Positions 1 to 7,972 of a stretch of 64,000 nt of DNA are shown here, piece by piece (position 1 is the first letter of the stretch; each line of letters begins with the position of its first letter). Made by a program: the position numbers and the translations under genes. Location of the stretch: positions 5,633,527 through 5,697,526 of the forward strand of contig BDGG01000001.1 of assembly GCA_001949185.1 (NCBI GenBank), read 5' to 3'. The notes beneath the pieces were generated by a model that was not told where the DNA came from, ran no database searches, and was given only the letters and a program-made list of their open reading frames with translations. The DNA is from Ramazzottius varieornatus. Lineage: Eukaryota > Animalia > Tardigrada.

Positions 1-375
1 TGTCAACTTAGTTAGCAAAGCTTGGGAAGCAATCAGACCGGAAACGATTGAGAATGCGTTCGTAGGAGCTCAAATTCTTCCTGAACCGACGTATATGCTT
101 TCGGTTGAATTGGTTGAAAACCACAAACAGCTTCTGCAGTTTAGCTTTAGTTCGGTTGAAGAAGACAGTGATGCTGAAGTAGCGGAAGATCCCTCTTTGG
201 AGTACAGCTTTTCGAATGATTATTGATTGAGTAAAACCGAAAAAGTTTGCCCCCGCCAGGTGTAGTTTCCCAGCGCACAAGGGTATATGTCCATGTGTAT
301 CGCGAGAGTACAGTATGTAATTCGCTGTGTATTACCATTGTATAGTACGTCCTTTGAAAGCCACGACAGCCAGGC

Positions 376-642
376 TTATCCAGCCTCGATTTCTACTTGA
401 ATGAACTTTAGAGACTCAAAATTCATTGTTCGTCCGTCTCTGCACCAGACTTTACAGTTGATCCACCGTCCCAACGAAGGTTTTGAAATATGTAGCCGAG
501 CAGCGAATTCTCTGACGGTTACGCCGGTGATTGCCTTCTCAGCATAGTAATCGGCTACAGAGCGACGCTTTTCGGCTTCCGAATAGTACTTTCGGGTCAC
601 CACAAAGGCTTGATCACGATATTGGTAGAGAAGAAAGGACAA
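376..642 (-). other. Short helix-turn-helix ORF, possibly transposase-derived
   Basis: RKYYSEAEKRRSV...TVREFAARLHISKPSLGRW resembles transposase N-terminal HTH domains; no catalytic domain is visible nearby. Confidence 0.35.
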
Positions 643-1011
643 GAGAGAACCATTTCTTATCTCTGCTGAACAGAAATGAACACTCCCCGCTGACTACAGT
701 GCACTCGCTCGATATGCGTACACCGCTGTTCGATTTCAAAATTTTAAGATCATCGTGAACGCAAGAGCGTTCGCCATAAACGTATTTGAGTGTTTTGTTC
801 ATGAACGCAGCGGATGCACATGGTGGAAAACAAATACTTGATTTTCATTCAGCTTAACTGTTTGTGAGCTGTTGACGACGCTTTCTTCCGCTTCTGGTAA
901 GCTGTACACGCACAACGAGATATTATGAGCCAGTAAAAATTATGGACCAAGCCTTTTCGCTACGTCGGCACGGGCAGGTGAATCTTGCTACAAATGAAAA
1001 CCAGCATCGAA

Positions 1012-1252
1012 TGCAGAAGGCTCGGCGAAGCTCAAATAAGCCGCTCTAGCCGTTCTCAGCCGTGGCTAAACATATTTTAGCCACGGCTAGAATGTATTGT
1101 GTGTTTGAATGATTTATTGATGCCAAACTATTTCAGCCGACTCAATATCAATAAATCAATGGAACGCACAATACAGTCTAGCCGTGGCTAAAAGTATTTT
1201 AGCTGCTTTAGCCGCGGCTAAGAACGCCTCAAGCTTCGCCGAGCCTTCTATA
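1012..1252. mobile_element. hAT-like MITE
   Basis: TIR AGAAGGCTCGGCGAAGCT (1015-1032) / AGCTTCGCCGAGCCTTCT (1232-1249); internal TAGCCGTGGCTA palindromes; 8-bp direct repeat GCATCGAA at 1004-1011 and 1253-1260. Confidence 0.8.
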
Positions 1253-1330
1253 GCATCGAAGGCTGCACTGCTGCACGTGCTGGACATTGGGCAGAGGAGC
1301 TGAAACTTGTCATATTACTATTTTATATGA

Positions 1331-1488
1331 TACTGTATTCCCCCAATATATTCGCGAACCCCGTTACTCGTGGCGCCACCTACAGGACATACGTCATACA
1401 TACGCGCCTATCTGTCGTACGTCATGTACGTTGTCGTAGGTGGCGCCATAGGTATCAGGCTTCGCGGAGATATCGGGGGAATACAGTA
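1331..1488. mobile_element. TA-flanked palindromic MITE (Tc1/mariner-type)
   Basis: TACTGTATTCCCCC...TGGCGCCACCTAC pairs with GTAGGTGGCGCCA...GGGGGAATACAGTA. Confidence 0.75.
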
Positions 1489-2629
1489 TTGTGTGGTATC
1501 TTCGGCACAACGTAGGACGGTGCTGCGCGGAACTTTGAAGACCGGAGCTGCTTCGCGTAATCCCATTCTATTCTCGACAGCAGATAGCGCGTCCTTCGGG
1601 GCTTCTTTGGTGTATCATCGAGGCTGCTTGGTCTTGAAGGGCTGGATATACTCAAAAACCTTTACGGAAAGGATATCGAGACAGCGAGTCCAGAGCTTTT
1701 CCGAGAGAAAGTCGAATAGCCATGCACAACAGCGGAAAAGCATAAGAGTGAAATAGCTGATCGGGTGACTGCCGCTGTCCATGACAATTTTCTACGGTTG
1801 AATTTACGGCGTTACGTCGTTTGTCCGATTCTGTTGCTGGCTTCCATACAAAATGTAAATTTGCCGTCTTTTCCGCCTGGCCCATAATTTTTACTGGCTC
1901 ATAATATCTCGTCGTGCTTGTACGGTAAACGTTTGACTGGTGCCAAATAGAAATCGAAGAGTGATGTACACATCTCGAACGATTGAACTGTACCGGCACA
2001 GAGGTATCAGCTGTTCCCGGCTGGCAGCCTCAGTCAGAAAAGACCGTGACCGGGGTTTGTTTTACGCTGAGGAGGACCCAAACATGTCTCACTTCATTGG
2101 CAGTTTAAAGTACAAGCGCAGCGGTGAAATCGAAACGTTGCGAGCTCCCCTTCGTGGACTTCGTACGTTTCGCCGTTACGGGCGTAAAGAGTCGGAGAGC
2201 GCTTCTGACCTCCAAATGCGTCCCGTGTACATGTTCACCCATCATGGGAGTTCTTTGGTGATGAAAATTAGGAGGAAGAATCAGCTTGGACAGTACTTTT
2301 CGGGGAACCCAGTTTGAGTTGCGCGCTAGATGCAAGTTACTCTCCTGCAGTGACGTCATAATTTAACAAGAAAGGGGTGGGACCGGGCGCAGCCACTAGA
2401 CAGCAAACGTTACAGCACCCGCTCCATGCCGTATCAGGTTGCTTAAAGGATCCCGAGTCGTACTGGGACTTCCGGGAAAGTTTTTCGAAAAACGGCGATA
2501 TCGATCAATCCTCACGATTAAAAAATGTGGCCACAGACAGTGTTATTTTAATCGGTTGGAATTTTCTGTGAATTTTGGCGAACGAAATTCAAAAGTACGA
2601 GGTTCTTGCAGGAAAGTTTACCGGCCATA

Positions 2630-2758
2630 GTCCGCGCAGCACGTCGTCGTATAAGTGGAGTACAGCCCCGGTCTGGCCTTACTACTTGTTCAACCCCTTC
2701 GGAGCTGCGTCCTCACCTACGTGGACGTGCTGAGCGGACGCACCAAATTTTCACGGTG
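2630..2758. mobile_element. Degenerate MITE, same family as 41537-41664 and 60453-60602
   Basis: GTCCGCGCAG...AGTACAGCCCCGGTC...GTTCAACCC...GCGGACGCA shared with those copies. Confidence 0.6.
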
Positions 2759-3159
2759 CGTAAGTTTCGTCTCTAACGTAGCATACTGTACGGTGATTGT
2801 TTATCAGCCTCAAAATGAAATCGGATAATTTTTGTCCGAATTTCGAGCGAGCGGACTCAGTGATGGACCCCTACACTTTTAATTCTTTTTAGCAAGTGGA
2901 AATTCGTACGTCTAGCGGTTCTGGGTCGGGAGGTCGGTTTGAGCTGCGTTAGAGATCATCGGAACGGTTCGGTTTGGTTCGGTTCGCCATACATTTGAAA
3001 TTCGACTGCTAAGAAGAGTTAAAATTGTATGAGCTACTGCTGAGCAGACTGTACCGTATTGCTTCACGATCTTCATGAACTGACGTCACAGCAAGCGTTT
3101 ACTGGATGCGTTATCATACCGGTAAACTCTACGTGTATGGTAACGCTTGTGCGTCAAGT

Positions 3160-5904
3160 TCATGAAGGGTTACATACGGTACTATTGACTTGTTTATCGT
3201 GTTGTGTGGCTTTGATACTTCGGTACTCGGCGCTGATGGAAATCTGCGACGGATATGCGGACACACACGCGTTTTGCGGTACGATGCGGATATTCAGTCC
3301 GTTCGGGCAATAAGGCTGCGTAAACACCACCACTTGGGACGTTTTTGTACAGGAAAGCTCGACTTTACTTGGGTGAATGGATAGGCTGCTGACCATATCC
3401 GGGAGACCCGACACCGGCCGATACACAAAAGAAGGGAAACTTTGCGCGTAGGTGTTCGTCAGCAGGACCGATCTCGTCATCTCATTCAAATCACCCGTCA
3501 CCTTGGTTTCACTGATGTCCGTCATATTGATCCACTTGTCCTGGCTCGCACCTGTGACTGTCAACGGACCGTTCAACACCATGCTAATGCTGTTTTTCTG
3601 ATCGACCGGCGACCAAAGTCTCCCCAGGATCTTGAAAGACTCTCCTACGTCGATGTTGTGCTGAGGATCGTTCCCGCTGACAATGAACGAACTCCATGGG
3701 CAATCGCTCAATTTTATGCTGTCATCCAAGTTGATCAACTCGTGATCGACATTGATGTATGACTTTTGGGTGATGGCCAACGGAGACCCGCCGATCGTGA
3801 TGACGAATGGCCGATCGAAGCGGTCGACCCATAACGCGCTGTCGGACGGAGCGACCTTGTGCAACTGGACGACTTTCTTCGCAATGGGATTGCCATAGTA
3901 TATTCCATTGTTGCTGGTGATAAAAAACATCGAACCACCGGTGAGAAAGCGCGCGGAGCGCGTGCTATCCATTGTTGCTGTTGGAGTCGCCGCTTGGAGA
4001 GTTACTGTGTAGGAACGCGCTGCTATGTTCTTCCCGCCTGCGTTCACTGTCTGATTGGGATCCTGAATCAAATTTGAAAGATTAGTTGCATCAATAGTTT
4101 CTTATCAGAGCCGTATGTTGGATGTTTCTCCTTACCTTGCTGGCTGTAAACATTTGTGAAGTGAAAGTGATCAGTAGAGCAGGGTCATCTCCGAACAACG
4201 TATGCAAACGAAACTTGTTGAAAGCCGGTACTCCGGAAGACAGGTTGAACGACCAAGGACCAGTAAAGATCAGGTTGGCGTAATTCACTGCACTAACTCC
4301 AGGATCCTTCCAGTAATAAAACACGCTAACTGTTCCTATTGCACCATCCGTATTATACGTCATAAAATAGAATCCCGGTCTTCCAGGTGTCTTGTCGAGT
4401 ACCACATCCACCAACGTGTCGTTCTGGCCCAGCCACTCTGATCTAATCTGCTGAGTCCAGTACTCCTTCGGCGATCCGGTCGTTGTACCCCATACTACTG
4501 TGTCATTGTTCCATGCCAGGTAACCGTCTCTTACCGCGTTCTGTGTTCCGGAGAGACACCATTGGTGAGTACGGAGACCCAGAAAGGCGCTCACGCTCAG
4601 ATCCATCCTCGTCGCCTGACCTGTTGTGGTGTTTTTGTGAATGAGATACAGTGTTCCAGATGTCGGACTTTGTTCGCTGCCGTCAGTCAAGAAGATGACG
4701 TACGAGTTGGTTACGACTAAATTGCTCAGTTTAGCGGTAGACAAAGTCCCGAGTTGTACGTTGAGAGGAAATGTTGTCGTGAACTCGTCGTTTGTATAGA
4801 TACACCCGTCATTCTGTCTACACATGATGGCGAAGTTGGTGTTACATGGCGCAAAGCGGATGGACGTGTCAGGAACCCACGTGAGAGTAGTTTTTGAGTC
4901 CAAGGTCGATGGAAATGAAAATTTTGGTCGAGAAATGGTTTGCCTCGAATCACCCACCGTAAAGCCGAACTTATCCTGTTTTCCCACTGACGACACCAGT
5001 ATTTTCGTCTGATAGGCCAAGTCAACAAAGCCTCCATTGAGAGGAACACCAGGTGTACCGTTGAGTGCACGGTGATATCCATAACGGTCATTGGTGGTTC
5101 TGTTGCAGATAAACGTGAAGTACGAGCTATCGTTATTCCAACTCGGTGGTATACTAGTGTTGCAGTAATAAAAGATATCGTACTGTTCAACGTAGTTGTT
5201 CTTGATTTTAGGTACGAGACCCATTTGACGGAAGGTCCGTGTAAGCGCAGCGTCGTTGGGCGTGGGTGTGACCGAACCGTGAAAGCTGCTCGTTAGCTGA
5301 AGGTACTGGTCGATGTTGAACGTGGGCATAGCAGCGGTCAAGTCGCCAAGAGATTGACCAATCACCCATACCCGGAAGACCATGTAGTCGTTCTTCCATT
5401 CTCGATCGACTGTAGTTGTGGCAGGTGACGTGGAGTTATCCGTGATGACTGGGACGGCATACCATGCGTAGAGGTCTTGGCAATAGTCGATGTTGACACG
5501 AACTTCGAGCGGGTCACTGGTGGCAGGTGTACCGACCAAAAGGTAGGTTTGCGGTTTACTACAGCGTAATATTCCGGTTGTGCTGTTACTGACAGACGAG
5601 CAAAGGCCCGTCGGTGTGGCGGTCCATGTGTAGGTCGTACCACTCGTCACAGGAACAACTTTGAACTACCGAAAAGAAACCTGTCTTTTGCAAGACTGCG
5701 GTGATTAAGCCAAAGGTCTTTAGAGTAGAGCCGAAAACACTATTGACTTACGGGAACGTTGGAGCAAGTTCTGGTGGGATCTCCTCCTAGACTATACAGG
5801 TCGTACGGAGGTGGAGCTTGCAACGTAGTTTGCGGAAGCCAGAGAATTGTGATCACGAATACGATATCAAAAACGGAATAAACAGACAACCCAGTATGAG
5901 TCAT
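3160..5904 (-). CDS. CatSper auxiliary subunit epsilon-like protein (C-terminal part not found)
   Basis: Exons 5904-5752, 5665-4136 and 4062-3160 joined by phase-0 GT-AG introns give ~860 aa with a hydrophobic N-terminus. Motifs LRCSKP, AWY, FRVW, LTRTFRQMGLVPKI, APC..AI...YTNDEF, GLRTHQWC, CPW...IDVGE and YCPNG occur in the same order as in CATSPERE as I recall it. Confidence 0.65.
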
Positions 5905-7287: not shown

Positions 7288-7972
7288 CAAGGTAATTATG
7301 CCTGTCCCGACCTCTGGTTGGCTAAAGCGTCCCGGCGAAACGATAGACGAGAGTCTCTCCTATCATCTGAGCTAGGTTGCTAAATCCCCGGACGAGCCTG
7401 GAAGAAACTACTGGACTCGGAAGTGACGTCAAAAACCTACACTGATGACGCAGCAACGTAATCTTCTCTTTGATCTACATCAGATTCAATGACTTTCTAA
7501 TTTTCAGTGTCTTTCTAATTTTTTCAGTGCTGTAATCAACCGTCAGAAGAAGCAAATATTACCTTTGACCGTCTCCATGAATGCCTTGTCAGCTTGGCTT
7601 GGAAAATCGTCTATACGATAATGCAGCCGATAATCCCAGTCCAGGAGCTTGATAACGTCCAGCGGGTTGACAGAAGCCATTTCACAGAAATCAGCGAGCA
7701 GATGACAGAAGATCGGAAAAAACAGAGAGAAGTGGATAAGGTAGGGCAGGCTCAATCAAAAACCCGAGTCAACCATCGAACAATCAGCTCTTGATTATTC
7801 GTTTCTCCGCCTATGCACCGCCCTAATTTTGACGTCACTTACGAGTCCTGCAGTTTCTTTCAGGATCATCGGGGGATTTAGCTACCTAGCTCAGATGATA
7901 GAAGAGACTCTCTTCTATCGTTTTGCCGGCACAGTTTAGCAATCCAGAGGTCGGGACAGCATAATCCTCTTG
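7288..7972 (-). mobile_element. Internally deleted Tc4/Tc5-like DNA transposon
   Basis: ~145-bp imperfect TIRs (CAAG...ATTATGCCTGTCCCGACCTCTGG...GTGACGTCAAAA); TAA on both flanks (7285-7287, 7973-7975); internal first exon MASVNPLDVIKLL homologous to the peptides at ~35018 (-) and 51937 (+). Confidence 0.8.

What the first reader, a model, noticed from the sequence alone, without database searches (positions are those of the whole stretch)
3160..5904. CatSper-epsilon-like gene in an apparent ecdysozoan genome, lacking its membrane anchor
Seen: an ~860-aa spliced open frame with about nine motifs in the same order as sperm calcium channel subunit CATSPERE. Known: Drosophila and C. elegans lack the CatSper complex. 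Inference: this lineage may retain CatSper-based sperm signalling. The frame stops soon after the CP motif; I found no C-terminal Ig-like/stem region or TM helix in 1-3160. It could be a secreted or repurposed ectodomain, a truncated gene, or a gene whose last exons lie left of the window.
Basis: partly seen in the sequence, partly recalled or inferred. Interest (0 to 1): 0.85.

Follow-up and report, generated by a model that had tools for sequence, protein, structure and literature searches.

The report
Tardigrade CatSper-epsilon gene, anchor exon found
The open frame is the first three exons of a tardigrade (Ramazzottius varieornatus) version of CATSPER-epsilon, a sperm calcium-channel accessory subunit; its membrane anchor is not missing but sits in a fourth exon 5.9 kb downstream, just left of the window, and RNA joins it on.

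Summary

The "lacking its membrane anchor" reading fails. RNA contigs from three studies splice exon 3 to an exon 2.7 kb left of the window. The donor is GT at 3218/3217, not 3177. That exon carries the Pfam CATSPERD/E C-terminal domain (E 4e-23), a TM helix and a 47-residue tail. The gene model is 1,097 aa, like its full-length relatives in Hypsibius and Paramacrobiotus. The public model (RvY_02014, "hypothetical protein") is mis-terminated.

A 99-nt cassette exon (3008-2910) appears in contigs of all three runs alongside the skipping form. It brings a stop, so an anchorless product is a possible second form.

The genome also has CatSper1-4-like, beta-like and weakly gamma-like loci, so the complex seems retained. 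Some arthropods are already reported to keep CatSper. Tardigrade CatSper3 and the D/E domain are already named in public records, though no paper found discusses them.

The odd point is that this species is parthenogenetic, yet the gene is intact and transcribed.

A neighbouring-window note (s1-790041) had flagged the anchor exon as an isolated exon; the two notes describe one gene.

The parts
5752..5904 (-). Exon 1: start codon at 5904-5902, 51 aa, hydrophobic signal-peptide-like segment, then a conserved LGGDP..C.NVP motif
   Evidence: Kyte-Doolittle 19-residue maximum 2.05; donor GTAAGT at 5751. The motif aligns with P0002 and P0010. Signal-peptide cleavage is inferred, not predicted with a dedicated tool.
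4136..5665 (-). Exon 2: 510 aa, N-terminal domains and most of the beta-propeller of the ectodomain; 10 N-x-S/T sequons
   Evidence: Only 9 relatives among 1.84 billion representatives, all tardigrade-like. The structural match to CATSPERE spans residues 308-816 of public model P0001, which covers the C-terminal ~295 residues of this exon and most of exon 3.
3219..4062 (-). Exon 3: 281 codons plus 1 base (phase 1), end of the propeller and the Ig-like region with conserved CP..F, IHPS..SC and CP.GL.IR..PQ..C motifs
   Evidence: The donor GT at 3218/3217 is used in RNA contigs of runs X1, X4 and X8 (frames). This region lies inside the significant profile stretch against CATSPERE.
2910..3008 (-). 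Alternative 99-nt cassette exon inside intron 3. In frame it gives 17 residues and then TGA, so its product would lack the PF22850 domain and the TM helix.
   Evidence: Joints L018 5758->5972 (runs X1, X8) and 59->5663 (runs X1, X4, X8), both with minus-strand GT..AG ends. Translation. Contigs carrying it are present beside the skipping form; contig depth is a poor measure of abundance.
1..3218 (-). Window part of intron 3. The whole intron is 5,912 nt and runs on to G000:C1:5630833. It is filled with dispersed repeats and transposon remnants.
   Evidence: The joint skips 5,912 nt. Repeat families at 1-315 and 901-1923 have dozens of genomic copies. A 49-nt TIR pair lies at 904-952 and 1875-1923. 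A Tc5-transposase HTH ORF lies left of the window.
1..1 (-). Marker only: the gene runs off the left edge of the window. Exon 4 lies OUTSIDE the window at G000:C1:5630066-5630832 (L005 2067-2833), 2,694-3,460 bases left of window position 1. It holds 2 bases plus 254 codons plus the stop: CATSPERD/E C-terminal domain, a 26-residue TM helix and a 47-residue cytoplasmic tail.
   Evidence: PF22850 at E 4.2e-23, 82 bits. It is the only such locus in the genome. phmmer to 7eeb_H CATSPERE gives 9.3e-20, with the alignment running into the TM helix. The acceptor AG is used in RNA contigs. Hydrophobic segment found.
2685..2729 (-). Terminal mini-exon of the public model RvY_02014 (15 aa then stop); probably a prediction artefact
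   Evidence: Located. Zero contig depth in all four runs over L018 5401-5600, which contains it.
7564..7680 (-). Extra 5' exon of the public model (41 aa placed before the signal peptide); unverified and probably not coding for this protein
   Evidence: Located. The orthologues P0002 and P0010 start directly with a signal-like segment. No reads were laid here.

Best explanation
Window 5904-3219 holds exons 1-3 of a four-exon, 1,097-codon gene. The gene is the R. varieornatus orthologue of CATSPER-epsilon, a single-pass type I membrane glycoprotein.

Shown here: signal-like N-terminus; an ectodomain that matches the CATSPERE beta-propeller and Ig-like region; splicing across a 5.9-kb transposon-laden intron to an exon that encodes the CATSPERD/E C-terminal (stem) domain, a TM helix and a short tail; transcription of the gene.

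Inferred by homology with the solved mouse CatSpermasome (7EEB): the TM helix packs against the voltage sensor of a pore subunit (CatSper2 in mouse). The ectodomain joins those of beta and gamma in a canopy over the heterotetrameric CatSper1-4 Ca2+ channel. It is needed for assembly and trafficking of the channel in the sperm flagellum, where Ca2+ entry steers the beat.

Tardigrades have only this one D/E-type gene, as expected if delta arose later than epsilon. In sexual tardigrades, whose sperm swim freely through water to the female, this is the likely role.

In the parthenogenetic strain sequenced here the gene is intact and transcribed, but its present use is open. A cassette exon yields a second transcript that would encode an anchorless ectodomain or be degraded.
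For: Gene structure.

RNA joints, with minus-strand GT..AG, in three runs from three studies: exon 3 to exon 4, and via the cassette exon.

Terminal exon: PF22850 at E 4.2e-23. Mouse CATSPERE 7eeb_H at 9.3e-20 against CATSPERD at 4.2e-11.

Family profile against the PDB: CATSPERE at 1.5e-27, with the main stretch covering profile 581-1010 and two weak collinear N-terminal stretches; delta at 1e-12.

Orthologues: the full-length proteins of H. exemplaris (1,153 aa) and P. metropolitanus (956 and 1,003 aa) are collinear and carry PF22850 plus a TM helix.

Partners in the same genome: CATSPERB_C at E 5.7e-13. A CatSper2-like locus whose top PDB hit is 7eeb_B. A CatSper1-like locus. A CatSper3-like locus whose relatives are named CatSper3 in NCBI. 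A CatSper4-like pore exon whose top hit is CatSper4. A weak CATSPERG_C match.

Literature: epsilon is as ancient as CatSper1-4, beta and gamma, and delta appeared later (PMC5362262). Paramacrobiotus sperm are released into water and swim and turn towards the female (PMC10127009).
Against: The structure model is of low confidence (mean pLDDT 46, pTM 0.42, 9 sequences), and the global TM-score to 7eeb_H is only 0.32.

The Pfam models for the CATSPERE and CATSPERD propellers (PF22844, PF15020) find nothing in this genome. The window's exons alone hit nothing in Pfam or the PDB by single-sequence search.

R. varieornatus reproduces without mating (PMC11175437), so a sperm role cannot currently be exercised in this strain.

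Contigs carrying a premature-stop cassette exon stand beside the productive form in all three runs.

The CatSper4-like pore reads T-Q-R-G-W where mouse has T-Q-D-G-W, so channel properties may differ.

Expression site, protein localisation and binding are untested. The complex prediction gave no verdict. The runs are labelled RNA only by guess; their RNA nature rests on the canonical spliced joints and on the absence of any processed copy in the genome.
Confidence: 0.85

Rival explanations
1. Relic in a parthenogen. The gene is a true CATSPERE orthologue, but in R. varieornatus it no longer does anything. It is transcribed at a low level and is drifting towards pseudogenisation.
For: The species lays eggs without mating (PMC11175437). 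Intron 3 has swollen to 5.9 kb with transposons in a compact 56-Mb genome. Contigs with a stop-bearing cassette exon stand beside the productive form. A small contig suggests a structural variant around exon 4.
Against: All 1,097 codons are open, all splice sites are canonical, and the productive isoform is present in three studies. The CatSper1-4-like exons examined, and the beta-like exon, are also open. More than 130 positions are invariant across three tardigrade species, including many Cys, Trp, Gly and Pro. The Arg in the CatSper4-like filter is shared with another tardigrade sequence, so it is not private decay.
Confidence: 0.3
2. Anchorless secreted ectodomain as the main product. The gene chiefly makes a soluble protein of about 860 aa, repurposed away from the channel.
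For: The cassette-exon isoform ends 17 codons after exon 3 and would give about 859 aa without the stem or TM helix. The public model is also anchorless.
Against: The exon 3 to exon 4 joint is present in the same three runs. The public model's terminal mini-exon has no RNA contig coverage. All three full-length orthologous proteins (P0002, P0003, P0010) carry the TM helix. With about 0.8 kb of exon 4 as 3' UTR, the cassette transcript may be a decay target rather than a protein source (inference).
Confidence: 0.07
3. CatSper complex with a role outside sperm. The genes are kept and expressed in a parthenogen because the channel works in another cell type, such as the oocyte, the embryo or ciliated sensory cells.
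For: Gene set with open reading frames in the exons examined, plus transcription of epsilon in an all-female strain (PMC11175437).
Against: No tissue data exist. CatSper has no reported somatic function (stated in PMC6660944). Retention can be explained by recent or incomplete loss of sex. Contigs cannot measure expression level.
Confidence: 0.1
4. An unrelated secreted beta-propeller protein that only resembles CATSPERE by fold.
For: There are no Pfam or PDB sequence hits for exons 1-3 alone. ESM feature neighbours were bacterial Ig/propeller proteins with scores under 0.8.
Against: The exons are spliced to a PF22850 exon. The profile alignment to CATSPERE extends into the exon-3 region. CATSPERE stands about 9 Z units and many orders of E-value above every generic propeller.
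Confidence: 0.02

Closest known systems
Mouse CATSPER-epsilon (CatSpermasome, PDB 7EEB chain H; also 9UBW chain H)
   Different: Identity over the ectodomain is only about 14-15%. Pfam's CATSPERE propeller and NTD models do not reach threshold. The protein is longer (1,097 against 985 aa). Complex membership and sperm expression are untested here. The host strain has no males.
Mouse CATSPER-delta (7EEB chain G; Pfam PF15020 plus PF22850)
   Same: It shares the C-terminal domain and TM helix (4.2e-11) and the overall propeller-stem-TM plan (Foldseek 1.4e-11).
   Different: It is clearly the weaker match on every measure. PF15020 finds nothing in the genome. The genome has a single D/E-type locus. 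This fits the report that delta arose later than epsilon (PMC5362262).
Hypsibius exemplaris OQV12029.1 (BV898_13679) and Paramacrobiotus metropolitanus LOC129597536
   Same: These are direct orthologues, 30-38% identical over the ectodomain and 46-53% over the last exon. They are collinear from the LGGDP motif to the WNENR motif after the TM helix.
   Different: They are modelled full-length with the TM helix. The R. varieornatus public model RvY_02014 stops after exon 3 and adds a doubtful 5' exon. UniRef already labels the Hypsibius protein 'CATSPERD/E C-terminal domain-containing protein'.
CATSPER-beta and CATSPER-gamma (7EEB chains E and F)
   Same: They share the canopy-subunit architecture (propeller, Ig-like region, TM helix). 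They are the third to sixth ranked Foldseek hits (about 1e-7 to 1e-8).
   Different: They are separate families with their own loci in this genome: beta-like at C5:1381612-1382319 and a weak gamma-like match at C3:1905329-1905745.

Membership tests
CATSPER-epsilon (CATSPERE) | CATSPERD/E C-terminal (stem) domain, Pfam PF22850 | tested here: met
   The exon at C1:5630066-5630832 scores E 4.2e-23, 82.4 bits, against a cut-off of 27.4. RNA contigs join it to the window's exon 3.
CATSPER-epsilon (CATSPERE) | Single C-terminal TM helix followed by a short cytoplasmic tail | tested here: met
   A 26-residue hydrophobic segment is followed by a 47-residue tail. The phmmer alignment to 7eeb_H runs into the TM helix.
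CATSPER-epsilon (CATSPERE) | Ectodomain with a beta-propeller followed by an Ig-like domain, collinear with epsilon | tested here: met
CATSPER-epsilon (CATSPERE) | Match to Pfam's epsilon-specific ectodomain models (Beta-prop_CATSPERE PF22844, CATSPERE_NTD2 PF22843) | tested here: not met
   PF22844 has no hit in the genome at E up to 0.1. The window's exons have no Pfam hit. The only trace is a sub-threshold PF22843 hit in the Paramacrobiotus orthologue (E 0.0018, 18.8 bits against a cut-off of 27). I read this as divergence of a fast-evolving ectodomain, not as exclusion.
CATSPER-epsilon (CATSPERE) | Closer to epsilon than to its paralogue delta | tested here: met
   Bit scores are 74.6 against 46.2 for the last exon and 99 against 50 for the profile. 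Foldseek gives 8.9e-26 against 1.4e-11. No tree with invertebrate D/E proteins could be built.
CATSPER-epsilon (CATSPERE) | Co-occurrence with CatSper1-4, beta and gamma genes | tested here: met
   There are candidates for all four pore subunits and for beta. Gamma is only weak: 32.5 bits summed over two exons.
CATSPER-epsilon (CATSPERE) | Physical membership of the CatSper complex (TM helix on a pore subunit's voltage sensor) | tested here: inconclusive
   The complex prediction of the stem plus TM helix with the CatSper2-like voltage-sensor exon gave no verdict. This needs biochemistry or cryo-EM.
CATSPER-epsilon (CATSPERE) | Testis- or sperm-flagellum-specific expression | not testable with these tools
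   Only whole-run contigs of a parthenogenetic species were available. The Paramacrobiotus sex-bias paper and its held supplements do not mention CatSper.
CATSPER-delta (CATSPERD) | Beta-prop_CATSPERD, Pfam PF15020 | tested here: not met
   No hit in the genome at E up to 0.1. Delta is the weaker match throughout.

The most novel reading that the evidence does not exclude
A candidate full CatSper gene set (four pore subunits plus beta, epsilon and perhaps gamma) is kept, and epsilon at least is transcribed, in an obligately parthenogenetic animal because it has a role outside sperm. On this reading, the cassette exon is a regulated switch between a membrane-anchored epsilon and a soluble epsilon ectodomain. 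The Arg in the CatSper4-like filter (T-Q-R-G-W) would give the tardigrade channel an altered, non-DDDD selectivity.
Probability: 0.12. Interest if true: 0.8.

Novelty: new member of a known kind. Interest (0 to 1): 0.45.

Why it matters
The result corrects a mis-annotated gene. RvY_02014 is a "hypothetical protein" that ends in an unsupported mini-exon, and the gene turns out to be a complete, membrane-anchored CATSPER-epsilon.

With the other loci found here, tardigrades can be added to the patchy list of ecdysozoans that keep the CatSper sperm calcium channel, which flies and nematodes lost. Two full-text searches found no paper that discusses CatSper in tardigrades, although database names for CatSper3 and the D/E domain already hint at it.

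Tardigrades offer sexual species with free-swimming sperm (Paramacrobiotus) beside parthenogens (Ramazzottius, Hypsibius). Heritable CRISPR now works in Ramazzottius. So the fate of a sperm-only channel after the loss of males becomes directly testable. The same holds for the single-epsilon, no-delta, presumably ancestral form of the complex.

Tried and rejected
- Single-sequence Pfam and PDB searches of exons 1-3 found nothing.
- ESM Atlas neighbours of exon 2 were bacterial Ig/propeller clusters with scores under 0.8, which is not informative.
- The word-index search with the C-terminal region of P0002 reached only tardigrade proteins, so no invertebrate D/E set could be gathered and no delta/epsilon tree was built.
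RNA shows the donor at 3218/3217 and the acceptor at L005 2835/2834.
- The second structure job (H. exemplaris full length, 4 sequences) gave pLDDT 33. It was not searched because a model that poor gives meaningless matches.
- The complex prediction (epsilon stem plus TM helix with the CatSper2-like voltage sensor) gave no verdict. It is evidence neither for nor against binding.
- L022 (C4:1211000-1213800) looked like a Ca-type pore by motif but is a CNG-type channel in another frame.
- The bacterial-type promoter/terminator scan was irrelevant here.
- Cai et al. 2014 (PMC4169769) is not held.
- The joined four-exon protein was deliberately not assembled, searched or folded as one sequence. 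Searches were made exon by exon, by reference. The fold used the public model P0001 exactly as returned by the search.
Full report
WHERE AND WHAT. The window is G000:C1:5633527-5697526 of a 55.8-Mb, 200-contig assembly.

On the minus strand three open frames line up. Reading the DNA and checking by script gives:
- exon 1 at 5904-5752 (51 aa: Met, a strongly hydrophobic signal-like segment, then an LGGDP..C.NVP motif);
- exon 2 at 5665-4136 (510 aa);
- exon 3 starting at 4062.

All junctions are GT/AG. The three translations are exact substrings of the public model. The two large ectodomain exons (2 and 3) carry 12 N-x-S/T sequons.

IS IT CATSPER-EPSILON-LIKE? Single-sequence searches of the window's exons fail: no Pfam family at E up to 1 and no CatSper chain by phmmer against the PDB. 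An exhaustive phmmer of exon 2 against 1.84 billion representatives finds only nine proteins. Besides the public model itself, these include full-length proteins of Hypsibius exemplaris (P0002, 1,153 aa) and Paramacrobiotus metropolitanus (P0003/P0010), plus fragments. Those two full-length proteins carry Pfam PF22850, the CATSPERD/E C-terminal domain (E 1e-19 and 3.5e-24), followed by a TM helix.

A profile of the four tardigrade proteins hits mouse CATSPERE at E 1.5e-27 and CATSPERD at only 1e-12. The main aligned stretch (profile 581-1010 against chain 461-908) starts inside the part encoded by the window's exon 3. Two weak stretches further N-terminal are collinear with it.

Pfam's own epsilon-propeller model does not detect it. 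This fits the rapid evolution reported for CatSper ectodomains (PMC5362262).

THE "MISSING" ANCHOR. Left of the window, a 265-codon minus-strand open frame (L005 2864-2067 = C1:5630066-5630863) holds a clear TM segment. It matches PF22850 at E 4.2e-23. It is the only PF22850 locus in the genome. It aligns to mouse CATSPERE at E 9.3e-20, right into the TM helix, against 4.2e-11 for delta.

I laid contigs of four public runs on a 6,000-nt stretch (L018 = C1:5630774-5636773) that spans the end of exon 3, the whole intron and the start of that exon. In three runs from three studies there are joints with minus-strand GT..AG ends:
- L018 59->5972 (skips 5,912 nt);
- the pair 59->5663 (three runs) and 5758->5972 (two runs).

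Converted to window coordinates, exon 3 ends at window 3219, with the donor GT at 3218/3217. Exon 4 starts at L005 2833, with the acceptor AG at 2835/2834. The phases fit: exon 3 leaves one base, and the split codon reads Asn. The junction region then aligns with the Hypsibius protein.

The resulting model has 51+510+281+1+254 = 1,097 codons. It ends with a 26-residue TM helix and a 47-residue tail carrying the conserved WNENR motif.

The runs are labelled RNA only by guess. Three things make a DNA explanation untenable: the splice signatures are canonical; the genome holds no second copy of the ectodomain; and it holds no processed copy.

THE PUBLIC MODEL AND THE CASSETTE EXON. The public model reads through the true donor and ends in a 15-residue mini-exon at window 2729-2685. 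That stretch has zero contig depth in all four runs. The model also places 41 residues from an exon at 7680-7564 in front of the signal peptide. The orthologues do not have these residues, and I could not test this part.

The second pair of joints defines a 99-nt cassette exon (3008-2910). One base differs from the genome at its 5' end. In frame it adds 17 residues and then TGA. Contigs with and without the cassette are both present in the three runs, although contig depth is a poor measure of abundance. The cassette transcript would encode an anchorless ectodomain of about 859 aa, or it may be degraded. I cannot tell which. This is the only surviving support for the "secreted ectodomain" idea.

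THE INTRON. Intron 3 is 5.9 kb. It contains:
- a 1-kb non-autonomous element with 49-nt terminal inverted repeats (904-952 and 1875-1923), which has dozens of copies in the genome;
- another repeat at 1-315;
- left of the window, an ORF with a Tc5-transposase DNA-binding domain.

Contigs at 95-99% identity over these parts are best read as transcripts of other copies.

THE REST OF THE COMPLEX. The same genome holds the following loci.
- Beta-like: a CATSPERB C-terminal exon with a TM helix at C5:1381612-1382319 (E 5.7e-13 and 1.9e-14).
- Gamma-like, weak: a CATSPERG_C match spread over two small exons that end in a TM helix at C3:1905329-1905745 (32.5 bits summed against a cut-off of 27.6).
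- CatSper2-like: a single-domain channel at C1:806.8 kb whose top PDB hit is CatSper2 (6.8e-18) with pore T-I-D-H-W.
- CatSper1-like: a channel at C1:7.741 Mb with a His-rich upstream exon. CatSper1 is its best single-domain hit (86.5 bits), and its pore is T-F-D-D-W.
- CatSper3-like: a channel at C13:47928-48938 whose relatives are named CatSper3 in H. exemplaris, P. metropolitanus and a crinoid.
- CatSper4-like: a pore exon at C21 whose top hits are CatSper4 (7e-8).

The CatSper1 and CatSper2 leads came from earlier first-stage notes, and I tested them here. There is no delta-type propeller and only one D/E locus. This agrees with the report that epsilon is as old as CatSper1-4, beta and gamma, whereas delta appeared later (PMC5362262).

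HOW IT MOST LIKELY WORKS. By homology with the mouse CatSpermasome, the protein is a type I membrane glycoprotein. Its TM helix sits on a pore subunit's voltage sensor. Its ectodomain helps form the extracellular canopy of the CatSper channel and is needed for assembly of the channel in the sperm flagellum. These steps are inferred, not shown.

The biology fits sexual tardigrades. Paramacrobiotus sperm are released into water, swim at about 260 um/s and turn towards the female (PMC10127009).

R. varieornatus, however, "lays eggs without mating" (PMC11175437). An intact, correctly spliced epsilon transcript in this species is either a not-yet-decayed relic or a sign of some other use. I rate the relic reading at about 0.3 and a non-sperm role at about 0.1. 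Neither changes what the gene is.

WHAT IS KNOWN. Flies lack CatSper (PMC6660944). That paper also reports a heterogeneous distribution among arthropods, and a springtail CatSper4-like EST was noted in 2008 (PMC2572835). An ecdysozoan with CatSper is therefore not unprecedented.

Full-text searches for CatSper together with "tardigrade" or "Ecdysozoa" found no paper that discusses tardigrade CatSper. The Paramacrobiotus sex-bias study does not mention it. Public records already name tardigrade CatSper3 and label the Hypsibius orthologue a "CATSPERD/E C-terminal domain-containing protein". I therefore class this as a new member of a known kind, with a corrected gene model.

LIMITS. The following limits apply.
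- Only one reads call was allowed, so the E1-E2 and E2-E3 junctions rest on sequence, on the public model and on the orthologues.
- Contigs cannot give expression level, strand or tissue.
- The structure model is weak, so the Z and E values should be read as ranking evidence.
- No delta/epsilon tree was possible.
Exons were searched by reference, and the public model was used as returned.

Noticed in passing
G000:C21:83611-84782 (L032, plus strand; pore exon L032 1300-~1450): A CatSper4-like gene. Its selectivity-filter motif reads T-Q-R-G-W where mouse CatSper4 has T-Q-D-G-W. The same Arg is present in a 70%-identical protein from another tardigrade assembly of unknown species (P0024). The public model RvY_18774 covers only part of the gene.
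   Followed up: partly
G000:C185 (whole 1,431-nt contig, L040) against C1:5629064-5631226: The contig joins the sequence downstream of exon 4 directly to the end of intron 3 plus the start of exon 4 (junction L005 1065|3227). This is the signature of a tandem duplication of a 2.16-kb segment holding all of exon 4, or else a haplotig or assembly artefact. It is not a processed copy.
   Followed up: partly
G000:C5:1381612-1382319 (L007 1498-2301, plus strand): A CATSPERB C-terminal domain exon with a TM helix (Pfam PF15149, E 1.9e-14). It is a beta-subunit candidate. The rest of the gene was not modelled.
   Followed up: partly
G000:C3:1905329-1905745 (L019 1141-1683, minus strand): Two small exons give sub-threshold CATSPERG_C matches that sum to 32.5 bits, above the cut-off. 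The last exon ends in a TM helix. This is a weak gamma-subunit candidate.
   Followed up: partly
G000:C13:47928-48938; C1:806800-807543; C1:7741595-7741999: CatSper3-, CatSper2- and CatSper1-like single-domain channels with T-x-D-x-W pores. The CatSper1-like gene has a His-rich upstream exon, as mammalian CatSper1 does.
   Followed up: partly
window 904-1923: A non-autonomous transposon of about 1 kb with 49-nt terminal inverted repeats (92% complementary) and internal palindromes. Dozens of copies at 77-89% identity are scattered over the genome. A second repeat at window 1-315 has copies at 93-96% identity.
   Followed up: partly
L005 4448-4957, plus strand (C1:5632447-5632956, inside intron 3, left of the window): An ORF with a Tc5-transposase DNA-binding domain (E 5e-8). 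RNA contigs at 95-99% identity cover it and show an 86-nt GT..AG intron on the plus strand (L018 2024->2111). These transcripts are probably from this element family rather than necessarily from this copy.
   Followed up: no
window 7564-7680 and 2685-2729, minus strand: The public model RvY_02014 adds a 41-residue exon in front of the signal peptide and ends in a 15-residue mini-exon without RNA contig coverage. Both look like prediction artefacts.
   Followed up: partly
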